64,000 bases of DNA from Octopus sinensis (GCF_006345805.1 NC_043005.1:100564001-100628000); one strand, 5' to 3'. Shown: positions 8,485 through 53,876, numbered from the stretch's first letter. The notes: generated by a model from the sequence alone, not told the origin. Program-made: numbers and translations.

Positions 8485-8637
8485 TCTCTTGTGTCCGGGA
8501 AGATAATTTTCTTTTTGTGCCTTATAATTTAACATACTCACCGGTAAAATTTCCCCTATTTTCCTTAAATTTTCATTGCGTCTTGCAACTTTTTCAATAG
8601 TCTTGACTCTTGCAAACTAAATCCCAAAACGAAATAA
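8485..8637. mobile_element. Deleted copy of inverted-repeat element family E (putative PLE-derived)
   Basis: Colinear with 18095-18310 apart from an internal deletion after gactc. Confidence 0.65.
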
Positions 8638-8646
8638 TATATGTTG

Positions 8647-8689
<43 letters not shown>

Positions 8690-8690
<1 letters not shown>

Positions 8691-11146
8691 ATGAATGGGA
8701 TAAAGAGAGTCTGCCAAATGTTGACCCAACAGAGGGACCAGCTATCCGAGTTGATAGTTCCGTAGTAGCTAAGGCGTTTAGGAGCATGAAGACAGGGAAA
8801 GCCCCAGGCCCATCAGGAATTACTGCAGAGATGCTCAAAATATCTGGCAGTGTCGGCTATAACCTAGTCACCCGTATAGTCAACCAGGTGATACACGAAG
8901 GAGTCATACCCATGACTGGTGTAGCAGCATACTAGTCAACTGCTACAAAGGTAAAGGTGATGCCCTGGATACAAATAATTACAGAGGTATCAAGCTGTTG
9001 GATCAGGTAATGAAGGTTACGGAGAGGGTCTTAGCCCAACTAATTAGAGAGAGAGTTAGTTTAGATGAGATGCAGTTTGGGTTTGTCCCAGGGAAAAGCA
9101 CCACTGATGCTATATTCCTGGTAAGGCAGCTGCAGGAGAAATACCTAGCCAAGGATAAGCCCCTGTACCTGGCTTTTGTTGACATGGAGAAAGCCTTTGA
9201 TAGGGTCCCCCGATCCCTCATCTGGTGGTCAATGAGGAAACTAGGGATAGATGAATGGCTGGTGAGGGCTGTGCAAGCCATGTACAGAGATGCCGTAAGT
9301 AAGGTTAGAGTTGGCAACATGTACACAGAAGAATTCAAAGTAGAGGTTGGGGTCCACCAGGGTTCAGTACTCAGCCCCCTCCTATTTATCATAGTCCTCC
9401 AGGCAATAACGGAGGAATTCAAGACCGGTTGCCCCTGGGAGCTCCTCTATGCTGACGACCTCGCTCTAATCGCTGAGTCACTATCAGAACTGGAGGAGAA
9501 GTTCCAGGTGTGGAAGGAGGGTTTAGAATCGAGGGGCCTTAGAGTCAACCTAGCTAAAACCAAAGTACTAATAAGTAGAAAGGTAGAAAACCCACAAATA
9601 TCATCAGGAAGATGGCCCTGTTCGATCTGTAGAAAAGGTGTAGGTAGAAACTCTATAAGATGTACCCAGTGTAAGCTATGGACACATAAGAGGTGCAGCA
9701 ATGTCAAAGGTAGGCTAACTGGGAAGATAGTTTTTGTATGTGGCAGGTGCTCTGGAGCACTGACCTCCGAAAATCTGCAGAAAACAACTTCTGTCACTTT
9801 CCGGGGGGAAAACTAGAAGTAGTTGATAGTTTCCGCTATCTAGGTGACCAAGTCAGTAGTGGGGGTGGGTGCGCTGAAAGTGTAACTGCTAGAATAAGAA
9901 TAGCCTGGGCAAAGTTTAGGGAGCTCTTACCTCTGCTGGTGACTAAAGGCCTCTCGCTCAGAGTAAAAGGCAGACTGTATGATGCATGTGTACGAACAGC
10001 TATGCTACATGGCAGTGAAACATGGGCCGTGACTGCTGAGGACATGCGTAAGCTCGTGAGGAACGAAGCCAGTATGCTCCGATGGATGTGTAATGTCAGT
10101 GTACTTACTCGACAGAGCGTTAGTACCTTGAGAGAAATGTTGTACCTAAGAAGCATCAGTTGTTGTGTGTGCAAGAGAGACGATTGCGCTGGTATGGTCA
10201 TGTGGCGAGAATGGATGAAGAGAGGTGTGTGAGAAAGTGCCAATCCCTAGCAGTTGAGGGAACCGTGGAAGAGGTAGACCCAGGAAAACCTGGGACGAGG
10301 TGGTGAAGCACGACCTTCGGACGTTAGGTCTCACCATGGAAATGACTAGAGACCGAGACCTATGGAAGTATGCTGTGCGTGAGAAGACCCGGCAAGACTA
10401 GTGAAGCCATAATCCGTGGCCCCTACCTGGGACGTAGTCAGTCCACCTGTGCATACCTTCCTTCTTGTGACACTTGTGAAGACCTGTTGAGGCAAGTGAG
10501 AATCGAATCGAATCGTATCAAATCAAATCGAACCAAATCAAAATAGATGAACATCAATGGAATTTGTATCCTTGTGGTACCAGTGCCGGTGGCACATAAG
10601 AAAACCATCCGAACGTGACCGTAGCCAGTACCGCAATGACTGGCCTCCGTGCTGAGGGCACGTAACAAACACCATCCGAGCGTGGCCGTCCGCCAGCCTC
10701 GTCTAGCACCTAAGAAAACACCATCCGAGCGTGGCCGTCTGCCAGCCTCGTCTGGCACCTGTGTCGGTGGCACATAAAAAACACCATCCGAGCGTGGCCG
10801 TCTGCCAGCCTCGTCTGGCACCTGTGTCGGTGGCACATAAAAAAAAACACCATCCGAGCGTGGCCGTCTGCCAGCCTCGTCTGGCACCTGTGTCGGTGGC
10901 ACATAAAAAACACCATCCGAGCGTGGCCGTCTGCCAGCCTCGTCTGGCACCTGTGTCGGTGGCACATAAAATCACCCACTACACTCTCGAGTGGTTGGCG
11001 TTAGGAAGGGCATCCAGCTGTAGAAACACTGCCACATCTGACTGGCCTGGTGCAGCCTTCGGGCTTCCCAGACCCCAGTTGAACCGTCCAACCCATGCTA
11101 GCATGGAAAGCGGACGTTAAACGATGATGATGATGATGATGATGAT
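8690..11146 (+). mobile_element. 5'-truncated RTE-clade non-LTR retrotransposon inserted in (TA)n
   Basis: RT motifs KAPGPSG, NNYRGIKLL, QFGF, FVDMEKAFDRVP, GVHQGSVLSPLLF, LLYADD; C-terminal GRPRKTW; ~740-bp 3' UTR ending in (GAT)n. No APE endonuclease region. Confidence 0.95.
8692..10401 (+). pseudogene. RTE ORF remnant (RT, Cys/His PHD-like insert, C-terminus) broken by small frameshifts
   Basis: Supplied ORFs 8998-9816 and 9738-10232 join across a frameshift near 9810; further shifts near 8911, 10170 and 10265; stop TAG at 10399-10401. Confidence 0.9.
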
Positions 11147-12274
11147 ATATATATATATACATATATATAAATTTATATAAATAAGGGTAAGAATGTTATT
11201 TAAATATTGAACTTATCAAGTGGCCAGCATGGGAATATAAACCTTCAAAGGTAATTATTATTAAAATTATAATTTAGGGTATCTAAGAGATACCCTAGAT
11301 TATAATTTTAATAATATGTACAGATATATACATATATATATGTATGCATGTACATATATATATATATGTATATATCAGTGGGTGCCTGTTTAGTCTCTTT
11401 CCTTCATGACTACTTTCCTTTATCTACATCAGTTTTGTGGAGCTTCTGTATGATGGGTTAGAGTTAGCCAGCTTCTTCAGCTCGGTTGTGTAGAATTTGT
11501 CATGATACATGTGCCATGAAATTTGATCGAGGACATCACTGTCAGCGTTTGCACATTCATTCATTACATTATCAATTTGACAGTAGATGGGCACACCTTT
11601 GAGCATAAATGACAGGAGTATTCAACAGGGGTTTATAGAACTTTTGTGCACATGAGCATCATTTTATAGCAAATAATACTGGCTTTTGTAAGCATAATAT
11701 GACCACAAATGGTACGAGTGAGAGCACTTCTGGATGGATTTTTGCTCTGTACAAACCCCACAATTCTCAAGAATTTTGTTGCCATTTCATTTCACTATTT
11801 TGTATTCAATTCAGCTTATCTCAAATTGCAAGCAATATCCACTGGCTAGAGGCCTTAGTTATGTTTTGATGACAAGATGTTCCCTATCATCAGTTAAATA
11901 TTTTAAAGATTTCTTTTTGTGACATCACGAAACCTCATTCTTGCTTGTACTAGGGATGCTTATGGAGAAATAATTCACGATAAGATAATCGCTTTGATCA
12001 CTTAAAACTCAAGAAAGATATTTCGTAAAAATTTGATGATGACCGGACTTGCTGTGTGCAATTAGGGCAGCAAAGGGAACACCAAGAGTTGCAGCTTTGA
12101 GTTTTCCTCTCATTTGCCTTTGTATCTCACACAGAAACACATAATTGCATATCATCATTTTTTATTTAAGTACTGTGTTAACCCTTCGTCATTCTACACC
12201 ATCACACCACACACACACACACACTCTCTCTCTCTCATCACTCCACCTTGTCATATTTAACTTAATTTAATTAG

Positions 12275-12423
12275 TCTATTCAACTGATCTACAAAGTCAG
12301 TAGTTCAGAGATGTTTATACATGTTGGAGACGTTCAGCTGAAATTGAATCAGTGCTGCAAACCGAGGTGGGACACGACTCCCCAGGGAGCGATTCATTAC
12401 CAAAATAAATATTTCCCAATAAG
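12275..12423 (+). CDS. Candidate internal coding exon of an unidentified host gene (SIQLIYKVSSSEMFIHVGDVQLKLNQCCKPRWDTTPQGAIHYQNKYFPI)
   Basis: tttaattag acceptor, 149-nt open frame, AAG|GTAAAC donor; its phase-2 end fits the next candidate exon. No homolog recognised. Confidence 0.5.
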
Positions 12424-13339
12424 GTAAACAGATAATAACTTTCAAAAAATGGCGAGGGAAAAGGAATGAATATATAAAAAAATAAATAAGTGAAAATAAA
12501 AGAAGATAAAAGTTTAATGATCAATGAAAGCATCAGAGAACAAAGTCTGATGGCAAATACGTTCTGTTTGACTTCAATAGACTCAGTCGAGAGAGACAAA
12601 TAATAATACATTGAGCTGAGTCAGTGGAAGGGCGGGGCTGTGGTAATTATAATAGACTTCGTTAAACAGAAAGCAACACATATATAGGCAAATAAAGACA
12701 TGTGTGTAAAGGTGTACACATGTGTGTACATATTGGTGTTCATAGATACCCCCCCCACACACACACACACAAACACACAGATGTGTGCATGTAGGTGATC
12801 ATACACACAATGTGTACACATAGACACAGATATATTTTCTTGAATTCCTTTATGTACACACACACACACACACACACATAAATATATATGAAGCATAAGT
12901 ATACTCATTATATTAACAGTTATATGTACAAACACACACACACACACATATACAAATATATATGAAACACAAGTATACTCATAATATTAACAGTTATATG
13001 TATATACACACATACTAACACACACACACACACACACACACAATTCCAATGATCAATTAACAATTCATTGTGAAAATTAACAGCAGATAGTATTTGAGAA
13101 CAATAAAAATTGACAGAAATCATGAAACACTTCTCACTCAAACATTTTATTAGACAAGTTTGCAACAGATATATCGTATTCCAATAAAATGACAAAAAGA
13201 AAAAAGAAAAAGAAAAGAAAAGAAAAGAAAGAAATAAAAAAGAAAAGGACGAGAAAACAGATTGTCATTTGGAAGAATTTAGTTGGTCAGTGCTTTAACA
13301 TTCAGAAAAATATCCTTTGTGCCTGATTTTATTGCACAG

Positions 13340-13415
13340 ATCAGTGACAGACTCATTTGAAGAACTGGAATCTGCTGTGGACAGTCATGTCACACAAATA
13401 AAGAAGAAGCATTAA
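13340..13415 (+). CDS. Candidate terminal coding exon (R)SVTDSFEELESAVDSHVTQIKKKH*
   Basis: ttttattgcacag acceptor; phase-2 start completes an AGA codon with 12275-12423; TAA at 13413-13415; repeat-poor sequence follows. Confidence 0.5.
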
Positions 13416-14704
13416 AAATGGACTTAACCAAGTCTGGAAAGTTTGATAGAGACATGAATGATGCCAGTGAATTTGGAACTTGTTCTGTATCGCAGATTTA
13501 AAATATGTTTAATTTCAATACTGTTGTTTTGAGGAATCTCAGATTATTTGGGATTCTTTTTTTTTGGGACTCTTTTGAAATGGAAGTAGTTTATAGCAGA
13601 AGGCCAAAAATGGAAGCATCACAACAATATTGGTGAGAAGATAGAGAGGTGCCATATCATTGATTTGTAGAATTCCTGTATCCATAATGGAAGTTTCCTT
13701 CATCAATTCATCTTTGGGTTGTCAGTACCAAATGTAGTCTAATTTTTTTTCCATTTTTTAAAATCAAATCCAGACATAGCCCGCAGCAAACTACACAAAA
13801 CTAAAACAGAGTAAAAAAAGGAAAATATTGAAACAAGAACAACAAATTCTTGACACTTTAATGGATGCAATACAGAGCAAAAACTCAAATTCAATTCTTT
13901 CCTTTGTTGATAACCCTAGACGAATTTTAACCAAACACATTGAACATGTGGCAATATGTTTGGATCAACAAGTTCTCACTGTTGCATGCTGGGTTAGCTG
14001 TTCTATGAAATGGTTTTGCAGCTCATTCTACATTTCGTGTTTCAATTTCAATTAACAAAGAGTATTGGCACTATTGATTTCTGTTGCTGGAAGGTAAAGA
14101 GAATTACTACCGTTGTCACATTTTTCAGGCATGTTTGTTTTGTTGCTATTTTTCCAAAACCAGAAAACAGGAAAGGAAAAAAGGTGGGTACCATAAGTAT
14201 GCTCATGATACCAAGTCTGTCAGATTCCTTAAAAAACTTGCACAAAAATGTAATTTTTTTAAAAAAGATCACAAAACGTTTCATCAACAGCTCCATACAC
14301 ATTACATGACCTTTTGTGAAATGCTTTACCCTCAGGTGACAAGATCTTAAAAACAAATCTGGTAGAGTTGTTATCATAAACATAAGTATATGACTAATTT
14401 TCTTCTCTTCCTTTTTTTAATTTTGGAAGTGAGTGATGAATTAAAACATACCATAAATATGGAACTGGCTTGATTTCCTGCTTTGTGTTGATGAAGTGAG
14501 GGAACAATTGAGATAATCTTTTTTACATCAACTCCTGATTGATGAAGACATTGTTACAGAATGTGACCACTGTGGAAAATATGTCACTGCGGCAAGAATT
14601 TCAGTGAAATCTTTAGACACCATTCTGCTATTTACCCTTCATGGTTAATGCTTCTTATTGGAGTAGCTTTGCAATGATTGTAAATGAATTTCAGTGACAA
14701 TCAT

Positions 14705-14942
14705 CATCATATCATCATCATCGTTGAACGTCCACTTTCCATGCTAGCATGGGTTGAACGATTTTGACTGAGGTCTGGCGAACCAGATGGCTGCACCAGG
14801 CTCCAGTCTTGATCTAGTAAAGTTTCTATATAGCTGGATGCCCTTCCTAATGCCAACCACTCTGAGAGTGTAGTGGGTGCTTTTTACGTGCCACCGGCAC
14901 GGGGGCCAGTCAGGCGGTACTGGCAACGACCTCACTCGAATC
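14705..14942 (-). mobile_element. RTE 3' tail copy
   Basis: catcatcatcgttgaacgtccactttccatgctagcatggg... is the reverse of the shared tail. Confidence 0.85.
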
Positions 14943-16859
14943 TTTTGATAAAAATAGGACGGTTTTCTCCGAACTGAGGTATTTGAGTATGATACCCTGT
15001 TAAAAAAATAAAAGGGTGCTGCAAGTATAGTAACAATGTTGGAAAATTAACCAACATTGTTGCATGGAAAGTTTTCCAGTGTTAAGATTTTACTTTTAAC
15101 TTTTATATCATCCAGATCTTAATTCAGGCACATTGACATTATATATGTATGCATGTGTGTGTCTTTTAGAATTTATTTTTTAACCATCATCATCATCAGT
15201 TTAATCAGCATCATTCATCACCATTGACAGTGATGACAGCTACTGCTGAGCAAAGCGTGAGCAAGCATACACTTTCAAACATATGTGTTTGTGTATGGTG
15301 AGGGATGTATTTATGATACTTCATTAAAAATAAATTGTTCACTTTTAGTTAATGTCCTGCTGATGAGGTTGTAATGTATGCCTTCCATTAGACAAATGAT
15401 GTCAAAAATCAGGACATTTTGTAAAGTTTTCCAACAACAGATACTTCCAAATATAGAGAGAAGCTTCAATATATGTCACTCAAAGACTGATTGCTTGCAA
15501 AATAATGATAGAAAGGAAAGTCTCTTTCTTCAATCAGGAAATGAAGACAGAAAAAAAACATTTCTACTTAACAGAAAATATATCTTCATTTCTGGAAAAG
15601 ATACAATATATAATTTTGTGATTGATCTGTTAAATGTTTGCAGAGATGTCACACCACCAAGGAATTAAGTTTTCCTTTATTCGCTTCCTTAGAATTCTTA
15701 TCCATTTAACACTGCTTATTTCACTGCTTTCTTAATATCTAAGGGACTAATACAAGAAAAGCTAAATAGACATATATATCATAATCTCTCATAAGACACT
15801 CCATAAATAAATTTTTAAAAATCTTCCCTAAAAATGCACATTATTAGTTCAGTTTTACATTATTTAATGCTTACATTTATTGTTCTGTATCTGAAGAAGG
15901 GTTATAATTTAATTTCTACAGAAATTATATTTGCAGTTGTATATTTTTCGTGCAATCAGCCACCCCAGGTGAAGTAAGGAGTAGAATCAGGTCTTGGTGA
16001 CTTTGAAGCAAAATTATATCTAAAATTATGTAAATTAACTATATCCAATTAATAGAAAAAATTAAGAGACTTAACATCAGAAACCTACTGTGTGTGTGTG
16101 TGTATACTCACACACACACACACAACACCAGTGCCACTGCTGCCATCATCATCATCATCATCATTATCGTCATCATCATCATCCACTATGAATTTTTCTG
16201 ACCTTCTCATTATACCTGCAGCACTTTTAAGTGCAATGAAATAATTTTAAGTTTGAAACTACGACAATGTGGTTAGTAGTTGAGTAGTTATTAACCTTAC
16301 AGTTATCATGCCATACCTGTAATCACATCAGGGCACCATGTAATTCAGTGATGTGGAATAGGGCAAAACCTGTTCATTTATCCACCATATAATCATTACT
16401 TCTCAAAAATGACACCCTACACTGTAATAATCAATCAATCAACATCAATGTCCGTCTTAAGTTGGTGAGCCAAAAGAATTACTGGTATGCTTGGTGAAAT
16501 GCTTAGCGGCATTTTGTCCATCTTTATGTTCTGGGTTAAAATTCTGCCACGGTTGACTTTCAGGTTTGATAGAATAAGTACCAGTTGAGTACTGGGGTTG
16601 ATGTAATAGACATGCCCTCTCTCCCGAAATTGCTGGTCTTGTGCCAAAATTTGAAATCAAAATCTGTCTTTCTTAGGGAAAGGAATTATTTTTTACACAC
16701 CCAGGCCTATTCTCCATTTTTTTAGAAAGAAGAAACCAAATCAAGACACACATTGGGTATTCCATTCATTTCTTAGCTCACAGAGGCAAGCCCCGTTCTA
16801 TGCTCGGGTCAAGGCATAGAACGCAACCCCCAATATCAGAAAGAAATAAAACCAAAAAT

Positions 16860-18094: not shown

Positions 18095-18310
18095 ATTGTG
18101 TCTGGGGAGAGTAATTTTCTTTTTGTGCCCTATTATGTAACACACTCACTGGTAAAATTTCCATGATTTTCTTATTTCTATTGTCCTAAAATTTTTGTTG
18201 TGTCTTGCAACGTTTTCAATAGTTTTGACTCTCCCCAGACACAATAGAATATGCTTCAACACATGAACTCATAAAAAGAATCTTGCAAACCAAATCTGAA
18301 AACCAAATGG
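18095..18310. mobile_element. Inverted-repeat element family E (putative PLE-derived)
   Basis: attgtgtctggggagagt...actctccccagacacaat inverted repeats, followed by gaatatgcttcaacac...cttgcaaaccaaatc shared with 39825-40060. Confidence 0.7.
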
Positions 18311-20427: not shown

Positions 20428-20436
20428 GTGAAAGCC

Positions 20437-20472
<36 letters not shown>

Positions 20473-20513: not shown

Positions 20514-20612
<99 letters not shown>

Positions 20613-23801: not shown

Positions 23802-23883
23802 TAGGCACAGTAAATTTAGAGTGAATACTTGATAAGTGTAGGCACCTGTATATGCCAGATAGTGGCAGAGGTGATATCAAATA

Positions 23884-24151
23884 AAATCAAAAACAGAACA
23901 CAAAGGATATCACGGTACACGTGTTTCAAGCTTTATAAACAATCTGTTATTACATCAGTGTATTATTGATATAAAAGATGGTTTAAAGCTCACTTCAGCC
24001 ACAAACATTGTTGGTCCAAAGATTACATCGCAATATAAAAAAATATAAAAAGTACATGTAGTATTACCTCAATAATACACTGATGTAATAACGGATTGTT
24101 TATAAAGCTTGAAACACGTGCACCGCGATATCCTTTGTGTTCTGTTTTTAA

Positions 24152-24154
<3 letters not shown>
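23884..24154. repeat. Long palindrome: ~86-bp arms (23884-23969, 24069-24154), ~99-bp spacer
   Basis: aaaaacagaacacaaaggatatc...cagtgtattattga is the reverse complement of tcaataatacactg...gatatcctttgtgttctgttttt with few mismatches. Confidence 0.9.
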
Positions 24155-24204
<50 letters not shown>

Positions 24205-36111: not shown

Positions 36112-37398
36112 TTGGGTTGTCCAGAAAGTTTGTGCAGATTTTTAAAGGAAAGAAAACAGTCAATAAATACTTGCCATTACATTTTTAATCAACCAAAGAT
36201 GAACTATTTTGTTGCACAATGCGTCTCCATCTTTCCTTTAACTTGAAAATACCCTCTTCCAAGAATCGAGGTGGTTTCATGGCAAAGAATTCATCAAGGT
36301 ATCTATTTACGTCATCCAAGGAATTGAAATTTTTACCATTAAGACTATTCTGCAGAGACCAGAATAAGTGGAAATGCAAAGGAGCAATATCTGGTGAATA
36401 TGGAGGGTGGGGTAACACATCCCAGCTGAGCTGCAGCAATTTTTGTCTGGTTCCCAAAGAAATGTGTGGTCTTGCATTATCATGTTGGAAAATAACACCC
36501 TTCTTGTTGGCCAATTCTGGACGTTTCTCTTGAGTAGCTGCTTTTAACTCATCCAGTTGTGTGCAGTATTTCTCAGAGCTAATTGTCTGGTTACTTGGGA
36601 AAAGCTCATAGTACAGAATTCCTTTCCAATCTCTACACAAAGCAAAATTTTTTAGGGTGAAGACCCGCTTTTGGGGTGGCTAAGGGTGCCTCATGTCGCT
36701 TACTCCAGGATTGCTTTCTCTCAACATTTCGGTAGATAATCCATTTCTCATCACCTGTCACAATTTGCTTTAAAAAAGGTGCGTTTTCATTCCAGTTATA
36801 AAGTGAATCACAGATGAAAATACGATCCAAAAGGTTCTTCTCACTCAACTCATCTAGTACCCAAACATCGTAGTGATTTGTGTACCCAAGCTTTCAAGCT
36901 TTACCAGGTGCTCACAAATGATGGATTTTGGTATGTTGAGGCTTTCTGCCAATTGTTAGGTCGTGCAATGTGGGTTATTCTCAATTAATGACTTGATTTG
37001 GTCATCATCTGTAGTGGATGGTCTACCTGATCGCTCTTTATCAATAAGGCTACAATCTCCAGCTCAGAACCTTCTGAACCACTTCTGTACAGTTCTTTTG
37101 AATAAAGAAACATCACCATAAACTGCGCATATTTCTTTGGTTACTTGTGAGGCATTTTTCCCTTTATGGAAAAAGAAAAGCATCAAGTGCTGAAAATGAA
37201 CTTTCTTATCTTCCATTTTAAAGGGTTACAGAATTAACACAGGTTATAGGAACACAAACCTTCTTCCACGAAAGGATTGCTTAAACTGTACTCTAAATGG
37301 AGGTGTAGTCAAATCCTGTTTTATGGACTCAACCATCTTCTAAAATAAGTCGAAAGGTAAGCTACTATAAATCGGCATGAACTTTCCGGACAACCCAA
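36112..37398 (-). mobile_element. Full-length (1287 bp) decayed mariner transposon, DD34D type
   Basis: TA|TTGGGTTGTCC[A/G]GAAAGTT TIRs at both ends with TA TSDs; IVTGDEKW, FQHDNARPH and HPPYSPDIAP motifs in ORFs 36633-36848 and 36185-36640; frameshifts and stops. Confidence 0.95.
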
Positions 37399-39824: not shown

Positions 39825-40060
39825 TTTTCTGTTGTGTCTAGGGAGAGTCATTTTCTTTTTGAAAAGGTTGCAAGACACAACGGAAGTTTTAGGAAAATAA
39901 AAATAAGAAAAAAAAGTGGAAATTTGACCGGTGAGTGTGTTCCATTATAAGGCACAAAAAGAAAATGACTCTCCCCAGACACAACAGAATATGCTTCAAC
40001 ACACGAACTCATATAAAGAATCTTGCAAACCAAATCCAAAAACGAAATAAAAAATGTGTT
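39825..40060. mobile_element. Inverted-repeat element family E with its interior inverted
   Basis: 32-bp IRs tgttgtgtctagggagagtcattttctttttg / caaaaagaaaatgactctccccagacacaaca; interior is the reverse complement of 18125-18222. Confidence 0.75.
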
Positions 40061-42487: not shown

Positions 42488-42534
<47 letters not shown>

Positions 42535-45218: not shown

Positions 45219-47454
45219 TATATCTTTTTGTTTATTTAGTATATGATATATCTCTTTTTTAAGATGGTAGGATGTAATTTGAAGGAGATTTGGCATCTCT
45301 TTCTAGCAACTACACAAAGCTCCCTTATTGACAGTTCTGATTTTATTCAGACAGTAACAATTTAATAAATTTATCAGAGAAGGAACATGGAAAGACTATT
45401 AGATTAGTTTGACAGGGGCATGTAATGGCTCTGTCATTCTTTATGCCTGCATATATAAATAAATGTATATACATTCATATATTGTTAGACGTATTGTGTG
45501 TCCGCTGTGTTCTACAAGCTGTATGTGTTTATGTAATATTCCTATGAAATCAGACTTCAAAAATGATATTTAATATTTAGTGGTGTAGGAACAGCAATGG
45601 GTTATACAGCAATTGTGTAGTTTATATGTTGTAGGGGGTTAAAGTTGTGACAGTGATGTGAATATACGTTTGTGTATGTGTATATATACTCACACACACA
45701 CACATTCATACATATAAATGTGTGTGTGAATGCATGTGTGGGCATATGTCTGTGTGTATGCGTGTGTATGTGTGTAAGATTTTTAGAGTGATGGTAGTAG
45801 TGTTTGTGTGTATGTGCATCTATAAGTATCAGAAATGGCTTTATAAGTAGAGAAATGCATATTTTATGAGTTAAAGAAGTCTGAAAAAGTTTTGACAAGT
45901 TGAGAATAAATTTGTTTCTCTAGAAAATGAAAAGACATACAGAAACCTTACACATACAGACAGACGTGCATGCCACACAAAGCCATACATTTAAGCATAA
46001 TACACATACACAGACCCACATACATAAACACACTGTGGCATATACTGAGAAGGCCAACATTCACATAAAGACCAAGTTTTCTTGTTATCGGGAACAAGGA
46101 GAGCTGGGATGAATTAATCTCCTGAAAGAAATGCTTTATAAATCAGGCTTTACAAATTAGGAAATGATTGATGAATAGCAATCAAATATTTGAAAGGCAA
46201 ATATTTAACAGGAATACACGACAATGTACACTATTTATTTTCTTCTTCAATATCAGGAAGATATTTGCAAGGATTGACTAACTCTTAAGCAACGATGATT
46301 TAGAACAAACAGGGAAATAATGAAAAGACATGATAAAGACCGAAAGAAGAAAAAGTTATACTTTATCTTGACGCGTGAAGATGTAAAATTTGTTGCATAT
46401 CAAACCTAAGCAATGATGGAATATATGAGAAGAATATTTGACTGAAATGGCAGTTGTGTTGATAAGATATGTGGATATACAGTTCATAATTTGATTTTGT
46501 AATGGATACATCAAGGAAACTATGGCTTTAAAGCAAAATGAATAAAAAGGAAATTATAGATGATCTTGAGAAAAGTGTTGTGTAGATATGATAGGAAAAA
46601 CCAAGGAAATTATAGTTCAGAGAAGATGACTCAAGGAAAGCACACTTCATTTCAATAGCTTGGTGCTGTCGTTTTATTCTATAGCTTAGTCTAGAAGACA
46701 TGGCCTGACTAGAATAATAGCTTAACAATTAGCAAATTGGCAGAATCATTGATGTGTAGGCGTAAATACTTTGTGGTACAAGTGCCAGTTCTGTTTTTTT
46801 CTGAGCTCAAATACCCACAAGGCTAACCTTACATTTCATCCTTGTTAGGTCAATATAATAGAGTGCCAGTCTAGGACAATACAAAGGCAGAACTTTTAGA
46901 ATAATAGAGGACTTGCCATGTATTACTTCCTCTAGCTCTTTGTACCCTATTTTTTAGGAGATAGACTCAAATCTATGGTCTGGTTTAACAACACCAACTT
47001 GCCTTTGGATGCCATTAGTAGAGTTCCCTTTGTTGCAAGCATTTAGTGGGGCCAGGTCTCTGGTTTGGGAATAACTTCTTCCTTTGCTTCTTCTTGGAGA
47101 CCCTGTAAAGGATCACAGGTATTGCTTTTCCCTCCTAATATTAGGTAAAACAAAAAAATAATTAAAACTGAAGAAAACAATAAAAAAATATATGAAGAAA
47201 TACACTTAACATCAGAAACAAGGGCAGGAACTTTGAGAAAACTTCAGTTAGTAACCAGAATTGCTAGAAATAGAAGTGAAACCTCTTTTAACTCATGCCT
47301 TATCACAACAAAAGGTAGGACAATATAATGTAAGATTTTTAAAAGTTTTTAGTTAGGGAGGAAAAGGCAGTGGACTGGACCCTTTACAAGCCCACCAAAA
47401 CTTGTGGGTGGCCTGTCTGAGCACATCTGTCTCTCTACTGAGGAGTGGTCATAT

Positions 47455-47775
47455 GTGAATGGTTGTACCATTCCTTGATCTTAGTTTTCCCCTTGGCATT
47501 ATCGCCAAAGGCTTGGAGAATTTCCTGGATGGTTTGAGCTTGAGTATCACAAAGCTTTTGGCAACATGTGATGCAATATCTTTGCTCAACGCATTCAGTG
47601 AAAACAAAAATCCAGTGAGCAATGTCTCTACTGAAGGTATAACAGCCAGGAATTGACGTGGCCTATCGGTGCAAAAATTTTCAATGCATGTACATGAAGC
47701 ATCACCTCCCACCCAAATGATTTTTACATTAGCTTTGGTGGGAAAAATTAAAGTTGGATACTTTTTGAACACATT
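47455..47775 (-). mobile_element. Mariner 5' fragment (irritans-like HTH N-terminus)
   Basis: tgtgttcaaaaagtatcc TIR-like start; EQRYCITCCQKLCDTQAQTIQEILQAFGDNAKGKTKIKEWYN. Confidence 0.75.
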
Positions 47776-48999
47776 TCATAAAAACTGATGATGCAATAGA
47801 ATTTTCTAACTGAATACATCACACACTAAAAAAATATTTAAGTTAATTTTTACTGTACTTAATGCAGTTATTGTCAACAAGTTAGAAAGAAAATAAATGA
47901 GATAGTGAAGAAAGTAATATTCATGAATGACTAAATTTATTCTGAGTCTTTTAGCAAAAACAGAGGCAATTCTAAACATCATTTTGCATAATTAAATCTT
48001 CTCAGACTTCACTGTACTATTGAGTTGCTTTTACATAACTGAATTCTACCTCTCTGTTCCATGGTTTGAGTCAAGAGAAGTAAAACAGTTAATATATTTG
48101 GATGTTCTTCATCTTTTGCAAAGAGATGTTGCATACAACAAATCAACATCATTATATGGTAGGTACTTCATTTACAAAGGTTTGATGGATAAAACACAAA
48201 AATATACTTGCAATTTTCTCTTTTGGAACTGACAGAGTGACACGGAACTACATATACAGAGTTATAGAGTAATGACATTCTTGAGGATCTTGAACGAAAA
48301 TTCATTTGGATAGCTATTTTATTTAGCTGAGTTTAAAGAAAAGTCTATTCTCAAATCATTATGCTCACATGATCTGGAAAAGCATGAAAAGAAAATCCAG
48401 AACTTTGCTTGCTTTGACAAATTCTAATAGCTCAACCACCAAACAAAAAGATTATAGTTCCACAAACACTAATCTACTTTTAAACATTAAAATCCACAAA
48501 CTGATACTAAATTCGCCTCCATATCCATAGACTGTATTTTATAGTTCATTAACTGTAACCTGATTTTTTATTTACACTTCATTAACTTATACCTGACATT
48601 TTTCATTCATGACTCAGAGCCAGAGTTCACTACAATTTTGTTGTTTTTATTTTATACTTTACGAATCATAACACAATTTTTTAGTTCGCTGCCAATGTTC
48701 CGGAATATTAATTTACAACGAAAGCTTAAATTTTAGAACCTACAAAGAGGAAAAAAAAAACAAAACTTCTGAGCTCAGTGAAGTAGATATTTAAATACTT
48801 TTAGACATTTTTATTTTTGTTTATTTCTTTGAAATGATTTTTACAGCAAATTTCTCCCGACTGGCAGAGATTGGTTGCTTCTCAAACATAAACACTGTTT
48901 TTAAGCAGATATTTTCATGTCAACTATGCGATAGTAAATGATATATAATCACCTACAATTTTATGAGATAAAACATGCTTATGGTTTCAAAAGGTAAAG

Positions 49000-49225
49000 C
49001 ATACAATTACCTACAGTTTCACCAGGTAAATTACAACTACCTGCAGAACAGTTTCATCAGGTAAATTATTTAATTAACACAGGTTTTACTTGGTAAAGTA
49101 CATGGGTTAGCTACAGTTTTATCACCTGAAGTATAAAGTCACCTACAGTTTTACAAGGTAAAATATATTTACTTCCAGTTTCACCAACCTAATAAGTTAT
49201 AGTTTCCTACAATTCCATCAGGTAA
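49000..49225. repeat. Degenerate minisatellite, ~30-40-bp unit with core ctacagtttcaccaggtaaa
   Basis: About six to seven diverged copies visible. Confidence 0.6.
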
Positions 49226-49496
49226 AAAGGATTAATTGCAAAATATTTGGCAGGGTGTGACTGCATTTGAGTATGACATTTTTTGTCTGTATTAAACTCT
49301 GTACTAAAACCTGTCTTAGAATACATTTCACCGTTTAACTATAAATTACCTTAAATCAGCACAATTGGAGTGAGAGGGTATATTTAACTGCCCAAATTAG
49401 AAGTAAAGAACATGTTAAAATGGCCTGTCTGGCAGTGATCTCTTTGTTTCTCTTGTCATTCATGCACACATCTTACCAAACCAAGGACAGCTTCAG

Positions 49497-49915
49497 GGCA
49501 AGCTGGCAGAAACGTTAGCATGCCAGGTGAAATGCTTAGCGGTATTTCATCTGCAGTCACGTTCTGAGTTCAAATTCCACTGAGGTCGACTTTGCCTTTC
49601 ATCCTTTCGGGGTCGATAAATAAAGTACCAGTTATGCACTGGGGGTTGATATAATCAACTTAATCCGTTTGTCTGTCCTTGTTTGTCCTCTCTATGTTTA
49701 GCCCCTTGTGGGTAGTAAAGAAATAGGTATTTCGTCTGCTGCTACGTTCTGAGTTCAAATTCCCCTGAGATTGACTTTGCCTTTCATCCTTTTGGGGTCG
49801 ATTAAATAAGTACCAGTTATGCACTGAGGGTCGATATAATTGACTTAATCCGTTTGTCTGTCCTTGATTGACCCCTCTGTGTGTAACCTCTTGTGGGAAA
49901 TAAAGAAATAAGAAA
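49497..49915 (+). mobile_element. Dimeric SINE family C
   Basis: Same gtaaagaaatag|gtattt junction as 28525-28870. Confidence 0.8.
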
Positions 49916-50795
49916 TAAGGACAACTTCAACACCCAACAATAACTTTGTTCTAATACTTGAAGGGGTCTTTTGTTTTTGCTCTCAGCTTCAATATTCTCT
50001 GCCATTCACAAATCACTACTCAGTTATTCTTTCCAAATCCAAAGTCAGCCAGATAGTATATTGTGATTCTAACTCCAAATACACAATATTCCACCTTCAC
50101 TGGATATACTATTCATTGCCAACTTTGTGCCCTCATATAATTCCCAAAGTTCTTCATATTTTAGGCCCTTCCATTTTATGTACTCACTGACTGCATTATC
50201 ACTTTCCCAAGCCACCATTAACTTTAAAAACAATAACTATTTTAGTGAACTCAGTTTATTCCATGGGATCAGAACATTTTTTGATTATTGCAACAAAAAA
50301 TGTACATTAAATCTAAATTTAATTTACAAAACACCTGTGTCTCTCCTTCTCAGAATGCATCAGTGGAATTTTATATGTATTCATATACAAATATACATAT
50401 ATACATACATACATACATACACATATATATACATGTATATACGCACACATATTTATTAACTAATACCCCACCCACACACACACAGACTCACACAAACATA
50501 AAATCACCATTTATGGAGCTAATTTTGACCATATATGGAACAGAAATTCTATTTAACTAAAACAAGCTAACTGGATGGAAACAATTTAACTGTAGTTTTA
50601 CAAGTAAATCTAAGTAGATTTAGTTGTTATCAAATAACTGGAATGTTTATGTCAGTTTTACTGTTATTGTTTATTGGTCGGCAAATACTCAGTCAGAATC
50701 TGCCATGAAACATGTCTCATACTTTATGGTAATAGAGACATGCCAGATAAAACCCCAATGTAATTTCATTTTCATGTATTACACCAAATATAGAC

Positions 50796-50854
<59 letters not shown>

Positions 50855-51179
50855 CACACACATACATATACACCCTCATACATAGAGTTTTACTCAGTAA
50901 TAATTAAATAAGCATAAGATGTATGCAAAACTGAAGGAAAGTTTCATGTACATAGAGAAAAGTAATGTTTTCTTGACATAAGCAATAAAATAACTTTGAT
51001 CATCATCATGGTCATCATCATTGAGACACTATATATTCACAATAAATCTAACAATTTAAAGGGGTTTAAGTTTGTATCCTGATAAATTCATGCTATACAT
51101 CATACTAATATTGCATGTGTGTTTTTATGTGCAGCAACTGGATAGTGTGACATATCATCATCATCATCATCATCATCAT

Positions 51180-51535
51180 CATTATTATTATTATTGAGTG
51201 AGAGAGCAGTGCATACCATCAAAGTGACACTGGGGTAAAATATACAAAGCCCAGTATACCCATCATGACTACCCATCTGATAAGGGTACACCAGGCACAT
51301 GCATCACAACCATATGTGCGCGACATGGTGATCTCATATCAAGATAAACAGTGCATGACCTCGCAGGTGGGGCCCAGTTAGAATTTTCTTCAGGTAGAGT
51401 AGCCCATTTTGCTCAAAAGGTCCCTGAATAAGGATTGCTTAAGGATGTTGAGCAAAACACCCATGTTTCCAAAGGTGAATTATTCAAACACCAAAGAATT
51501 CCTCTCAACACATAACTATGATGCTCCCCCACTTA
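51180..51535 (-). mobile_element. Family D repeat, 5'-truncated
   Basis: Matches 27080-27430. Confidence 0.75.
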
Positions 51536-51570
<35 letters not shown>

Positions 51571-51975
51571 TTAGTTTTGTCTTGTTGAGAACATGGTAAC
51601 CTCTCCAGTGTTGGTGCCATCATGAAATACACCCATCACACTCTATAAAGTTGTTGTTGGCATTATTATGAAGAGCATTCAGCTGTTAGAAGCAAAATCA
51701 AAAACTAAATGTATGATCCACCTAGGAGGGTAGAAACTCTGAATAAGAGTTGAGTAAGACTATGTTGATGATGATGATGAGGATAAGGATGATGGTGATG
51801 GTGATGTCCAATATTACTGTTTGTGATTGTGATTGTTGAAATGTCAGATTATATTTCATTGCAAGTTGTAAATACACAATTAAAATAAAATGAGTCGAGC
51901 CAAATATTATCGAATTCTCAGAACAAACTAAGTTGTTACCTTAGTTTGTCCTGAATATATATATATATATATATC

Positions 51976-52218
51976 ACAATTGCAGCGTGGAAGGTGTTTA
52001 TAAGCCATTTAAGAAACACACAAAAGCCGTTCGATTCACTTCAACATTTAAGTTTAATTTGTCAAAATATTTTCGTCGCTTTAAGACCGCGACCTGTTCA
52101 CTGACAAAAAATCCGTGCAGCACGGATTTTGACAAATTAAACTTAAATGTGGAAGTGAATCGAACGGCTTTTGTGTGTTTCTTAAATGGCTTATAAACAC
52201 CTTCCATGCTGCAATTGT
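51976..52218. repeat. Palindrome: 93-bp arms (51976-52068, 52126-52218), about two mismatches
   Basis: acaattgcagcgtggaagg...tttgtcaaaat versus attttgacaaa...ccttccatgctgcaattgt; the two near-identical antiparallel ORFs at 51987 and 51998 arise from it. Confidence 0.95.
52058..52108 (-). ncRNA. Putative minimal type I hammerhead ribozyme, G3:C8 core variant
   Basis: Minus strand: UUUGUCA-GUGAACA-G-GUCGC-GGUCUUAAA-GCGAC-GAAA-AUAU-UU-UGACAAA. 7-bp helix I, 5-bp helix II, palindromic helix III loop. Confidence 0.65.
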
Positions 52219-52397
52219 TTTCGTTTCAGCACACGATCTCAGATCAAATTACTTGCTATGCGAGTACATCTCCGTAATATATATATATATATAAGAAAAT
52301 GTAAATATAATACAAATATGGCTGTTAAGTTGATGCACTTTTTAAATAACATGGAGCACACTGACACTCTACTTTCAGTTCAGCAGTCATTGTATTG

Positions 52398-52660
52398 TGA
52401 TCATCATCATCATCGTTTAACGTCTGCTTTCCATGCTAGCATGGGTTGGATGATTTGACTGAGAACTGGCGAACCAGATGGCTGCACCAGGCTCTAATCT
52501 TGATCTGGCAGAGTTTCTACAGTTAGATGCCCTTCCTAATGCCAACCACTCCGAGAGTGTAGTGTGTGCTTTTACGTGCCAGTGGCACAAAGACTGGTCA
52601 GGTGGTACTGGCAATGGCCACAATCGAAATGGCATTTTCTTACGTGCCACCTGCAAAGGA
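52398..52660 (-). mobile_element. RTE 3' tail copy between the PLE ORF and the palindrome
   Basis: Reverse of the shared tail. Confidence 0.85.
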
Positions 52661-52712
52661 GTCAGTCCAGTAATTATTGTACAGAGTAGTAGTAGTAGTA
52701 GTAGTAGTAGTA

Positions 52713-53111
52713 GAGGCCTTTCACATAGGGTAGATAGACTGTGGATAGTTTATCGGTTTCGTCCTCTCTTTTCTTCATAATTAGAGTGGAGAGTATGCTT
52801 TTGGGGTAGTTATTGTTAAATAGATTGTTACTGAGCTTAATCATTTCTTCGTGGTGGGTATCAAGGTCGCTACTTATATTCATTGCTCGATGTTTTAGGC
52901 ACTGAGCAATCCCTCTCTTTACACTGTGTGGATGGTGGGAACTGAAGCTGAGGTATCGTCTCATGAAGGTCGTCTTGCGGTATATGGATGTCCTGAATCC
53001 ATACTTAGTGTGTGTTATTAATACATCCAGGAATGCTAGCTGATAGTCTTTTTCTTTTTCCATTGTGAACTGTATGGATGGCTTCATTGAGTTCACATGA
53101 TCTAACAGCAC
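52713..53111 (-). mobile_element. Penelope-like element fragment (RT C-terminus, thumb and linker)
   Basis: LLDHVNSMKPSIQFTMEKE..LAFLDVLI..SIYRKTTFMRRYLSFSSHHP..KRGIAQCL..RA..YPKSI..VYLPYVKG is the typical PLE pattern; open for ~133 codons, ends in (CTA)n before any GIY-YIG motif. Confidence 0.85.
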
Positions 53112-53123
53112 TTGGACTTAAAC

Positions 53124-53340
53124 AACTTAAACAAGCGGACTGTCCAGAAGATTTGCAGGAGATTCCAAAGTCGTCCGGAGGCTGTGGTCGAAGCCAATGG
53201 CGATTTTGTTAAATAAATTTACTCTTTAGTATTTCAAGATATTTTTTTGTAACTTTGGCAAACATATCAGTTAAAACGAGATGTCAGTGTTAATTTCCTT
53301 TTTGTATAATTTGGAAGACAATTTATTCATTGCACCGTGT
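53124..53340 (+). mobile_element. Tc1-like transposon 3' end
   Basis: NLNKRTVQKICRRFQSRPEAVVEANGDFVK* followed by a caccgtg|TA terminus. Confidence 0.7.
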
Positions 53341-53370
53341 ATATATATATATGTGTGTGTTATATGCATG

Positions 53371-53427
<57 letters not shown>

Positions 53428-53587
53428 TATATATAAATGGATGAATGAATTATCCTTTGTTTACCATTAACATGGAAAATTCAATAAACAGTTACCACGG
53501 TAGCAAAATTCACACAAGTAACAAGGATGTAGCGACCTATTCAAAGGTAGAAACTTCGGGTTAATGTGCGGTAATTTGTGTAGTATA

Positions 53588-53876
53588 AATAAATAAATGG
53601 AGTTGAATGCAGATGTTATTGAAATTCCTTTACTTTTGACATATGTTTCGAAGACAACATTGGTTTTATTCCAAAGGAATAAACTGTGTAAAACAATGCA
53701 ATCTTCTCATCAGGAGAGAAAGAGAATCTATCTCAACAAGACATTATTTCCTGATGAGAAGATTGCATTATTTTACACAGTTTATTCCTTTGGAATAAAA
53801 CCAATGTTGTCTTCGAAACATATGTCCAAAGTAAAAGAATTTGAATAATATCTGCATTCAACTCCATTTATTTATT
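53588..53876. repeat. Palindrome: 128-bp arms (53588-53715, 53749-53876), 33-bp spacer
   Basis: aataaataaatggagttg...cttctcatcagga versus tcctgatgagaag...caactccatttatttatt with few mismatches. Confidence 0.95.
53747..53830 (+). ncRNA. Putative type I hammerhead ribozyme with canonical core (mirror copy on minus strand, 53634-53715)
   Basis: UUUC-CUGAUGA-GAAGA...UCUUC-GAAA-C-AUAU-G-UC^-CAAA. Extended helix II, palindromic ACAUAUGU helix III, GUC cleavage triplet; helix I weak (C.C plus 3 A-U). Confidence 0.7.

What the first reader, a model, noticed from the sequence alone, without database searches (positions are those of the whole stretch)
8563..53876. Penelope-type hammerhead motifs with three different 3:8 core pairs, each in a palindrome or inverted-repeat element
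Seen: four kinds of palindrome or IR element in the window. Three carry a hammerhead-shaped core with palindromic helix III: CUGAUGA (C3:G8, 53751), GUGAACA (G3:C8, 52095-52101) and UUGAAAA (U3:A8, family E). The two variant types also share an extra nucleotide after A9 and a covarying helix II (GUCGC/GCGAC versus GUUGC/GCAAC). Known: PLE pseudo-LTRs carry minimal type I hammerheads thought to act as dimers; C3-G8 is a tertiary Watson-Crick pair that tolerates compensatory swaps; PLEs often leave inverted terminal copies. Inference: cephalopod PLEs, or non-autonomous retrozyme-like derivatives, use non-canonical-core hammerheads that CUGANGA-based searches would miss. I cannot tell whether this is already described.
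Basis: partly seen in the sequence, partly recalled or inferred. Interest (0 to 1): 0.88.

Follow-up and report, generated by a model that had tools for sequence, protein, structure and literature searches.

The report
Hammerhead-ribozyme relics in octopus inverted repeats
Two short inverted-repeat elements in this octopus-like DNA window carry sequences shaped like the small self-cutting "hammerhead" RNAs of Penelope-type jumping genes, and one has a swapped core base pair that I did not find described in nature, but it is a single untested copy and the third claimed family is at background level.

Summary
Only element G (minus strand, 52058-52108) meets a full type-I minimal-hammerhead descriptor. 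It has a 7-bp helix I, core GUGAACA (G3:C8), one bulged G, helix II GUCGC/GCGAC, GAA, the palindrome AAUAUU and U17. It is the only hit in the window. In 360 kb of comparison DNA the same descriptor finds only four canonical hammerheads, each 150-250 nt downstream of a Penelope-like element (PLE) ORF.

Element C (53751, mirror copy 53713) has canonical boxes, a 57-nt helix II, the palindrome ACAUAUGU and a GUC triplet, but no helix I.

Family E (three copies) is marginal. Helix I is at most 3 bp, and G12 is lost in one copy and A13 in another.

Hammerhead letters are enriched over permuted-letter decoys: 5 hits against a mean of 0.1.

C and G are symmetric head-to-head inverted pairs that abut (TA)n, like PLE pairs seen in other genomes. 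They flank a truncated PLE ORF fragment.

Best reading: these are remnants of PLE-type insertions that keep minimal hammerheads. U3:A8 covariation, the extra nucleotide after A9 and dimeric helix III are already published. I did not find a natural G3:C8 core described. There is one locus, no family alignment and no activity data.

The parts
51977..52217 (.). Element G: inverted repeat. Arms are 51977-52068 and 52126-52217 (about 98% identical) with a 57-nt centre. It can also be read as a palindrome centred on 52119 with a 44-nt extra segment (52069-52112) in one arm, flanked by AAAAT direct repeats. The left end abuts (TA)n.
52058..52108 (-). G hammerhead-shaped motif, read on the minus strand: helix I 5' strand UUUGUCA (52108-52102); core GUGAACA with G3:C8 (52101-52095); bulged G (52094); helix II GUCGC-GGUCUUAAA-GCGAC (52093-52075); G12A13A14 (52074-52072); palindromic helix III AAUAUU (52071-52066); U17 (52065); helix I 3' strand UGACAAA (52064-52058). 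The predicted cleavage site is between 52065 and 52064.
53584..53880 (.). Element C: inverted repeat. The arms start 2-3 nt 5' of each CUGAUGA and run about 128 nt outward (about 95% identical). The spacer is 35 nt between the two core words (53714-53750) and is not palindromic. The right end abuts (TA)n.
53751..53826 (+). C motif, right arm: CUGAUGA (53751-53757); 57-nt three-segment helix II closed by G10.1-C11.1 (53758-53814); GAA (53815-53817); palindrome ACAUAUGU (53818-53825); C17 forming a GUC triplet (53826). Helix I is absent. A 50-nt tail runs to the arm end.
53638..53713 (-). C motif, left arm: mirror copy on the minus strand with the same boxes. It is not an independent observation.
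39827..39989 (+). Family E copy 1: 35-nt terminal inverted repeats. The sequence runs UUGAAAA (39859-39865), G, GUUG-CAAGACA-CAAC, then GGAAG. The position aligned to A13 is G, which can also be read as one extra G before the GAA. A further 59-nt segment X (to 40048) follows the right end.
18096..18249 (-). Family E copy 2: UUGAAAA at 18219-18213. G12 is replaced by A (CAAC AAAAA). Segment X lies on the opposite side (18250-18308).
8481..8625 (-). Family E copy 3: UUGAAAA (8597-8591), A, GUUGC-AAGAC-GCAAU, GAA, AAUU, U (to 8567). No helix I. It has an internal deletion relative to copy 2 and lies between (TA)n tracts.
52690..53116 (-). 5'-truncated fragment of a Penelope-like element ORF (RT thumb and linker, HTH_animal region). 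It is 86% identical in DNA to an Octopus sinensis copy and is cut at its 3' side by (TAC)n and a SINE. It lies between G and C, on the same strand as the G motif.

Best explanation
**What C and G are**
- C and G are remnants of Penelope-type retroelement insertions, either autonomous PLEs of unidentified families or short non-autonomous elements mobilised by PLE enzymes.
- Each is a symmetric head-to-head pair of extremely 5'-truncated copies with the 3' ends pointing outward, inserted at a (TA)n microsatellite.
- Each copy keeps the minimal type-I hammerhead that PLEs carry 50-90 nt from their 3' end.

**How the parent element would work (inferred)**
- The hammerhead of a multimeric or read-through transcript pairs with a second copy through its palindromic helix III.
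- It then cleaves after position 17, which trims the RNA before reverse transcription.

**State of each motif**
- C keeps a canonical core but lost its helix I 5' strand to truncation.
- G keeps all three helices and every invariant residue, but has G3:C8 in place of C3:G8. This swap keeps the tertiary Watson-Crick pair and is known to retain partial activity when engineered.
- In their present context both are most likely inert. A transcript of all of G folds into a long hairpin that captures the helix I 3' strand.
- Family E is a separate repeat with terminal inverted repeats. Its UUGAAAA...GAA resemblance is probably fortuitous.

**Shown versus inferred**
- Shown: the sequences, their folds, their rarity by chance, and the architectural parallel to real PLE pairs.
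- Inferred: PLE origin, dimer cleavage, and that G3:C8 was a feature of the source element.
For: 1. G is the only window match to a full descriptor that allows any Watson-Crick 3:8 pair. Its minimum-free-energy fold shows helix I (8 pairs in that fold) and helix II.
2. Chance expectation for a match of G's quality is 4e-4 to 5e-3 per window.
3. In 360 kb of other DNA the same descriptor hits only four canonical hammerheads, each 150-250 nt 3' of a PLE ORF stop. That set includes 207 kb of unrelated metagenome contigs, which gave no hit.
4. G has the hallmarks listed for PLE minimal hammerheads and seen in those four: one bulged nucleotide after A9, G10.1-C11.1 and a palindromic helix III.
5. 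C has CUGAUGA, G10.1-C11.1, GAA, an 8-nt palindrome and GUC. Ignoring helix I, about 0.01 matches with a palindrome of 8 nt or more are expected per window for any Watson-Crick 3:8 pair, and fewer for C:G alone. The true letters give 5 hits against a decoy mean of 0.11.
6. Real PLEs form the same symmetric head-to-head pairs. L003 has 1746-nt arms that are 100% identical with a 178-nt spacer. L034 has two ORFs head to head with a hammerhead in each arm on opposite strands.
7. In L003 the copy ends about 48 nt after the hammerhead cleavage site, compared with 50 nt in C.
8. G, C and the fourth palindrome each have one end abutting (TA)n, although only 2.8% of window positions lie that close to such a tract. 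Microsatellite and AT-rich target bias, inverted 5'-truncated copies and clustering of PLE insertions are all published.
9. A PLE ORF fragment lies between C and G.
10. The C3G/G8C double mutant of an Anolis PLE hammerhead partly restores cleavage.
Against: - G and C are each single-copy in the window. No other copy could be retrieved, so there is no family consensus and no covariation test.
- Neither shows sequence homology to the neighbouring PLE family's hammerhead and tail. That family uses a canonical core.
- C lacks helix I. Its two arms are truncated at the same nucleotide, which a foldback DNA element would also explain.
- No Rfam hammerhead model matches. This is weak evidence, because a genuine PLE hammerhead scores only 12.3 bits against a threshold of 34.
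- The G helix III is six A-U pairs and the cleavage triplet is UUU, both expected to be weak.
- The whole-element hairpin (-161 kcal/mol) out-competes the ribozyme fold.
Confidence: 0.5

Rival explanations
1. Chance resemblance. G, C and E are ordinary foldback or MITE-like DNA elements of an AT-rich, repeat-rich genome. Their internal hairpins and palindromes happen to sit next to short words (NUGANNA, GAA) that mimic a hammerhead.
For: - A hammerhead needs only 11 fixed letters. Published work warns that consensus matches arise by chance in large data sets.
- With loose settings, weak hits of E3 quality appear in comparison DNA: two in L032 among about 150 kb of PLE-bearing loci.
- C and E lack helix I.
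- There is no homology to known PLE ends and no Rfam match.
Against: - Two independent strong matches (G and C) lie within 1.7 kb. About 0.03 are expected per window from base composition for palindromes of 6 nt or more, or about 0.04 after a word-frequency correction of about 1.5-fold.
- The true letters rank first of 105 permutations.
- G also has G10.1-C11.1, which the descriptor did not require, and the one-nucleotide bulge, which it allowed but did not require.
- No target-site duplications were seen at either element.
- The architecture and (TA)n association match PLE insertions.
Confidence: 0.27
2. Cephalopod PLEs or retrozyme-like derivatives use three active hammerhead families with C3:G8, G3:C8 and U3:A8 cores, including family E.
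For: - All three motifs keep U4, G5, A6 and A9 with a Watson-Crick 3:8 pair.
- The E consensus can be drawn as CUA|UUGAAAA|N|GUUG..CAAC|GAA|AAUU|U|UAG.
- U3:A8 hammerheads are real in PLEs of Schistosoma.
- E shows an extension on alternate sides that loosely recalls the PLE 'tail'.
Against: - E loses G12 in copy E2 and A13 in copy E1. Its helix I is at most 3 bp, and helix II is 4 bp plus a mismatch in two copies.
- E copies share identical outer boundaries and so behave as a unit with terminal inverted repeats.
- E-quality hits occur at background rate.
- No E copy was found in 20.7 kb of O. sinensis DNA.
- There are no tandem arrays as in retrozymes.
Confidence: 0.1
3. G is a mutated, dead copy of a canonical CUGAUGA hammerhead. 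The G3:C8 state arose after insertion by neutral decay rather than being a property of the source element.
For: - Other PLE copies do carry inactivating core changes, for example G12 to A in L003.
- Only one arm of G carries the motif, so the state cannot be cross-checked against the other arm.
Against: - The arms are about 98% identical, so the element is young.
- Two specific complementary substitutions at positions 3 and 8, with every other invariant residue and all helices intact, are very unlikely under random decay (inference).
Confidence: 0.08

Closest known systems
Minimal type-I hammerheads of Penelope-like elements (Cervera & de la Pena 2014, PMC4209133)
   Same: - Open helix I, followed by the core, then one unpaired nucleotide between A9 and 10.1 (G and E).
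- G10.1-C11.1 pair.
- No helix III hairpin; instead a palindromic 15.x-16.x stretch suited to dimer formation.
- Occurrence as dispersed single motifs and as pairs on opposite strands 100-700 bp apart.
- A published core covariation, U3-A8.
   Different: - G has G3:C8, which I did not find reported as a natural variant.
- C has a 57-nt helix II where 4-8 bp is usual, and it has no helix I.
- Neither sits in a demonstrable pLTR next to its own ORF.
- No multi-copy family is available.
Canonical PLE hammerheads of the neighbouring PLE family
   Same: - The same layout, with a 1-nt bulge, a G-C-closed helix II and a palindromic helix III.
- On the sense strand near the 3' end of the element.
- Head-to-head symmetric copies with one hammerhead per arm (L034).
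   Different: - Those have CUGA(U/A)GA, helix III ACGU and helix I (G)ACAC/GUGU(U) or GCAA/UUGC.
- They lie 150-250 nt after an ORF stop.
- G and C share no alignable sequence with them.
Natural U3:A8 hammerheads (Perreault et al. 2011, PMC3088659) and the engineered C3G/G8C double mutant (Martick & Scott 2006, as cited in PMC11167929; Anolis PLE hammerhead)
   Same: The 3:8 tertiary pair is kept as a Watson-Crick pair while its identity changes. The engineered G3:C8 form is partly active, including in a PLE hammerhead.
   Different: G would be a naturally occurring G3:C8 example. Its activity is untested.
Metazoan non-LTR retrozymes (Cervera & de la Pena 2020, PMC7229834; Li et al. 2026 preprint)
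   Same: Short non-coding elements that carry type-I hammerheads and are thought to derive from PLE pLTRs.
   Different: Retrozymes are tandem direct repeats that yield circular RNAs. G, C and E are inverted repeats with no tandem array.
MITE or foldback DNA transposons
   Same: Short, non-coding, with inverted arms. The E copies share fixed terminal inverted repeats.
   Different: No target-site duplication was seen at G or C. The arms are inverted over their whole length. The hammerhead letters are not expected in such elements.

Membership tests
Hammerhead ribozyme (type I) | Core box C3-U4-G5-A6-N7-G8-A9 | tested here: inconclusive
   C matches fully, CUGAUGA. G has GUGAACA, so U4, G5, A6 and A9 are kept and 3:8 is swapped to G:C. 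E has UUGAAAA with U:A. The swap keeps the pair but departs from the consensus.
Hammerhead ribozyme (type I) | G12-A13-A14 directly after helix II, A15.1-U16.1, and H17 not G | tested here: met
   Met for G, for both C arms and for E3. Not met in E2 (G12 is A) or in E1 (A13 is G, or one extra G before the GAA).
Hammerhead ribozyme (type I) | Three helices around the core (I, II, III) | tested here: inconclusive
   G has helix I of 7 bp, helix II of 5 bp and helix III only as an intermolecular palindrome. C has no helix I. The E consensus has a helix I of at most 3 bp.
Hammerhead ribozyme (type I) | Score at or above the Rfam gathering threshold (RF00163 and clan CL00010) | tested here: not met
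   No hammerhead match at gathering threshold or at E<=10. A genuine PLE hammerhead (L004) also fails, with 12.3 bits against 34, so this test has little power for this subclass.
Hammerhead ribozyme (type I) | Site-specific self-cleavage after position 17 | not testable with these tools
   This needs in vitro transcription of monomer and dimer constructs.
PLE minimal hammerhead (Cervera & de la Pena 2014) | One unpaired nucleotide between A9 and 10.1, a G10.1-C11.1 pair, and palindromic 15.2-16.2 | tested here: met
   G has all three. C lacks the bulge but has the other two. E has the bulge and the palindrome AAUU.
PLE minimal hammerhead (Cervera & de la Pena 2014) | Located in the pLTR or 3' region of an element with an RT/GIY-YIG ORF on the same strand | tested here: inconclusive
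   A PLE ORF fragment lies on the same strand as G, about 580 nt upstream of the G motif. It belongs to a family whose own hammerhead is canonical and unrelated in sequence. No ORF belongs demonstrably to G or C.
PLE minimal hammerhead (Cervera & de la Pena 2014) | Many genomic copies forming consensus families with compensatory changes | not testable with these tools
   The source genome cannot be searched as DNA. The pseudo-ORF search and the metagenome scans found no copies. Only E has three copies, and they show no compensatory change.
PLE insertion architecture | Adjacent inverted 5'-truncated copy (head to head, 3' ends outward), with microsatellite or AT-rich targets | tested here: met
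   G and C are symmetric inverted pairs with unique spacers and one end on (TA)n. The same geometry is seen for ORF-bearing PLEs in L003 and L034.
MITE / DNA-transposon derivative | Terminal inverted repeats plus a target-site duplication of fixed length | tested here: not met
   Inverted termini are present, but no matching duplication flanks G (…TATATATC | …| TTTCGTTT) or C. This rests on inspection of single copies only.
Metazoan retrozyme | Tandem direct repeats, each unit carrying a hammerhead | tested here: not met
   There are no direct tandem copies of G, C or E in the window.

The most novel reading that the evidence does not exclude
Octopus genomes hold a young family of PLE-dependent, non-coding retroelements whose minimal hammerhead uses a G3:C8 core pair. 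It is active as a dimer and invisible to CUGANGA-based searches. If so, the 3:8 pair of natural hammerheads is free to take several Watson-Crick identities, and current censuses of PLE and retrozyme ribozymes under-count them.
Probability: 0.15. Interest if true: 0.55.

Novelty: new variant of a known kind. Interest (0 to 1): 0.36.

Why it matters
A confirmed natural G3:C8 hammerhead would extend the known natural covariation at the 3:8 tertiary pair, for which only U3:A8 is published. It would show in nature what so far rests on engineered double mutants. It would also argue for descriptor searches that allow any Watson-Crick 3:8 pair when counting ribozymes in PLE-rich invertebrate genomes.

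The finding also gives a compact picture of how PLE insertions decay into small palindromes at (TA)n tracts. Such palindromes can be mistaken for MITEs during repeat annotation. The larger ideas are already in the literature: hammerheads in PLEs, dimer action, an extra nucleotide after A9 and core covariation. The gain is therefore incremental.

Tried and rejected
- **Rfam scans.** I scanned the whole window at gathering threshold and the candidate regions at E<=10. There was no hammerhead match. I set this aside as uninformative after the positive control (L004) also failed.
- **Search for other G copies through its pseudo-ORF.** The 69-aa reading frame that spans the palindrome gave no protein match.
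- **Metagenome DNA scans.** A G-arm 21-mer gave nothing. An E-terminus 17-mer gave 27 matches, all by chance, with no octopus DNA.
- **Sequence homology of G and C to PLE 3' ends.** A MAFFT alignment hinted at 67% identity over 33 nt between the G tail and the L003 tail. An nhmmer profile of three PLE hammerhead-plus-tail sequences did not hit G or C, so I dropped the idea.
- **Homology among C, G and the fourth palindrome.** None was alignable.
- **The fourth palindrome (23874-24165) as a fourth hammerhead.** It has CUGAUGU…GAA-ACACGUGU-A, but A9 is U and helix II does not close.
- **The nhmmer top hit at 49484.** It is the tRNA-like head of the common SINE, not a hammerhead.
- **Supplementary files of the 2014 paper.** None are held. 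Lunse et al. 2017 is not held either.

Full report
**Setting.** The window is AT-rich eukaryotic DNA (about 36% G+C), full of microsatellites, SINE copies and transposon fragments.
- Its repeats match a 20.7-kb stretch of the Octopus sinensis chromosome CM016859.1 many times (locus L001), so it comes from an octopus or a close relative.
- ORFs include a LINE reverse transcriptase (8998-9816), a mariner transposase fragment (36185-36640) and, on the minus strand at 52690-53116, part of a Penelope-like element (PLE) ORF.
- The PLE fragment has 72% amino-acid and 86% DNA identity to an O. sinensis copy. It is truncated at its 5' end relative to that copy and cut at its 3' side by (TAC)n and a SINE.

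**Checking the observation.** Self-comparison confirms four kinds of inverted-repeat element: G (51976-52218), C (53584-53880), family E (three copies) and a fourth at 23874-24165. I wrote a descriptor for a Penelope-type minimal type-I hammerhead with these parts:
- helix I;
- N3-UGA-N7-N8-A with 3:8 Watson-Crick;
- 0-2 extra nucleotides;
- a helix II hairpin;
- GAA;
- a self-complementary stretch from A15.1 to U16.1;
- a non-G nucleotide at position 17;
- helix I return strand.

Even with 3-bp helices allowed, the only window match is G, with a 7-bp helix I, a 5-bp helix II and a 6-nt palindrome. The minimum-free-energy fold of the 96-nt region gives the same two helices.

C matches only if helix I is ignored and a 57-nt helix II is allowed. 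It then reads CUGAUGA, a G-C-closed helix II, GAA, ACAUAUGU and a GUC triplet, in both arms.

E matches only in copy E3 and without helix I. In E1 and E2 the fifth helix II pair is a C-A mismatch. G12 is A in E2, and A13 is G in E1. Its 'covariation' with G's helix II compares elements that share no alignable sequence.

**Chance.**
- I counted places in the real window that have the required pairings whatever the letters, then multiplied by the letter probabilities. This predicts 4e-4 to 5e-3 matches of G's quality per window.
- Without helix I it predicts 0.08, 0.03 and 0.01 matches for palindromes of at least 4, 6 and 8 nt. Word-frequency corrections are only about 1.5-fold.
- With the structure rules held fixed and the seven invariant letters permuted, 104 decoys give a mean of 0.11 hits (maximum 2). 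The true letters give 5 hits, which is 4 independent loci (the same ranking holds with a looser helix II).
- In 360 kb of other DNA the full descriptor hits four times. All four are canonical hammerheads 150-250 nt downstream of PLE ORF stops. That DNA includes 207 kb of unrelated metagenome contigs, which gave no hit.
- Loose settings produce two weak A/U-rich hits, both in L032, among about 150 kb of PLE-bearing comparison loci. That is the quality of E3 and of an unlisted hit at 47877.
- G and C are therefore unlikely to be accidents, while E is at background.

**What the elements are.**
- G has 92-nt arms with two mismatches and a 57-nt centre. It can equally be read as a perfect palindrome centred on 52119 with a 44-nt extra segment (52069-52112) in one arm, bounded by AAAAT direct repeats.
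- That segment supplies the helix I 5' strand, the core, helix II and GAA. The inner end of the arm supplies helix III, U17 and the helix I 3' strand. Either the segment was inserted, or the other arm lost it by a microhomology deletion.
- C has about 128-nt arms (about 95% identical) that begin 2-3 nt before each CUGAUGA, and a 35-nt unique spacer. Both copies therefore lack the helix I 5' strand.
- In both elements the hammerhead sense strands run outward. The predicted cleavage site lies 90 nt (G) or 50 nt (C) from the outer end.

**Parallels in real PLEs.** PLE-bearing loci from other genomes show the same geometry at full size.
- L003 has two PLE copies head to head, with 1746-nt arms that are 100% identical and a 178-nt spacer. 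Each copy ends about 48 nt after its (G12-mutated) hammerhead.
- L034 has two ORFs head to head with a canonical hammerhead in each arm on opposite strands.
- The literature describes these features: adjacent inverted 5'-truncated copies, microsatellite or AT-rich targets, and a tendency of PLEs to insert next to each other.
- In line with this, G, C and the fourth palindrome each have one end abutting a (TA)n tract, although only 2.8% of positions lie that close to one. A PLE ORF fragment also lies between G and C.

**Limits of the PLE link.**
- The neighbouring PLE family carries a canonical hammerhead, gacac-CUGAUGA-aa-helix II-GAA-ACGU-u-GUGUU in O. sinensis, with close relatives in L004 and L034.
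- A profile of that hammerhead plus its tail does not detect G or C. G and C would therefore belong to other, unidentified PLE families or to non-autonomous elements.
- No further copy of G or C could be found. The window has none, L001 has none, the pseudo-ORF search was empty, and the metagenome scans held no octopus DNA.
- Family-level covariation, which is the decisive test, could not be run.

**Mechanism.** By analogy with published PLE hammerheads, the parent RNA would form an intermolecular helix III through the palindrome, AAUAUU in G and ACAUAUGU in C, and cleave after position 17.
- G keeps U4, G5, A6, A9, G12-A14, A15.1-U16.1 and H17, and replaces C3:G8 by G3:C8.
- The engineered C3G/G8C double mutant regains part of the activity lost in either single mutant, including in an Anolis PLE hammerhead. 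A slow but competent ribozyme is therefore plausible.
- In place, however, a transcript across the whole G palindrome folds into a -161 kcal/mol hairpin that captures the helix I 3' strand.
- C has no helix I, and its GAA pairs with upstream U's in the predicted fold.
- I therefore regard both as relics. The sequences, folds, statistics and architecture are shown. The PLE origin, dimer cleavage and ancestry of the G:C pair are inferred.

**Comparison with what is known.**
- Hammerheads in PLE terminal repeats, their minimal helix III and dimer action, the conserved extra nucleotide between 9 and 10.1, G10.1-C11.1, pairs of motifs on opposite strands, and a U3:A8 core covariation with about 1,300 hits in Schistosoma were all reported in 2014.
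- Natural U3:A8 was first noted in 2011.
- I found no paper on octopus hammerheads or on a natural G3:C8 core. The library lacks Lunse et al. 2017 and the 2014 supplements, so this absence is provisional.
- Rfam models are blind to this subclass, because a genuine PLE hammerhead scores 12.3 bits against a threshold of 34.

**Verdict.**
- The one possibly new point is a natural G3:C8 hammerhead core. It rests on a single well-formed locus.
- I put 0.5 on the PLE-relic reading, about 0.27 on coincidence in foldback elements, and about 0.15 on an active G3:C8 family.

Noticed in passing
window 23874-24165: A fourth inverted-repeat element, with about 96-nt arms and a 99-nt spacer; its right end abuts (TA)n. 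Each arm carries CUGAUGU, then 24 nt, then GAA and an 8-nt stretch (ACACGUGU followed by A in one arm, ACACGUGC in the other). This is a near-hammerhead with A9 replaced by U and no closable helix II.
   Followed up: partly
window 51977, 53880, 24165, 8481: One end of each of G, C, the fourth palindrome and E3 lies within 3 bp of a (TA)n tract of at least 10 bp, although only 2.8% of window positions lie within 5 bp of one. On the other side the next (TA)n lies 23-149 nt away. This looks like insertion into (TA)n with an extension on one side.
   Followed up: partly
window 39990-40048 and 18250-18308: A 59-nt segment X follows the right terminal repeat of E1 and, inverted, precedes the left terminal repeat of E2. 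The family therefore has a short and a long end on alternate sides. E3 has a 51-nt internal deletion between AGA repeats.
   Followed up: partly
It is judged to be background.
   Followed up: no
window 53100-53220 (+): This stretch reads as the C-terminal end of a Tc1/mariner-type transposase (…RFQSRPEAVVEANGDFVK*), judged by eye only. It directly abuts the 5'-truncation point of the PLE fragment, so the PLE copy may have inserted into or next to a DNA transposon remnant.
   Followed up: no
L003 8045-11714 and L034 7955-11771: Two independent examples from other genomes (ENA assemblies ERZ21867824 and ERZ25068511) of PLE copies in symmetric head-to-head pairs. The L034 pair carries identical canonical hammerheads (gcaa CUGAAGA a GGCCC-UUUUA-GGGCC GAA ACGU u UUGC) on opposite strands. 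The L003 hammerhead has G12 mutated to A.
   Followed up: yes
L001 10937-10985 (Octopus sinensis CM016859.1): A canonical PLE minimal hammerhead (gacac CUGAUGA aa GCUG…CAGC c GAA ACGU u GUGUU) lies about 250 nt downstream of the PLE ORF stop, with a tRNA-like SINE fragment in between. It shows that octopus PLEs of this family carry ordinary C3:G8 cores.
   Followed up: yes
window 8998-9816 (+): A LINE-type reverse transcriptase ORF (RVT_1, E=3e-29) followed by a PHD or C1-like zinc finger. This is an ordinary retrotransposon remnant next to E3.
   Followed up: no
window 10438-11120: Long ORFs on both strands made of a tandemly repeated unit of about 20 aa (…PPTQVPDEAGRRPRSDGVF…). This is probably a tandem array of part of the common SINE, and a 61-bp palindrome lies at 11256-11316.
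   Followed up: no
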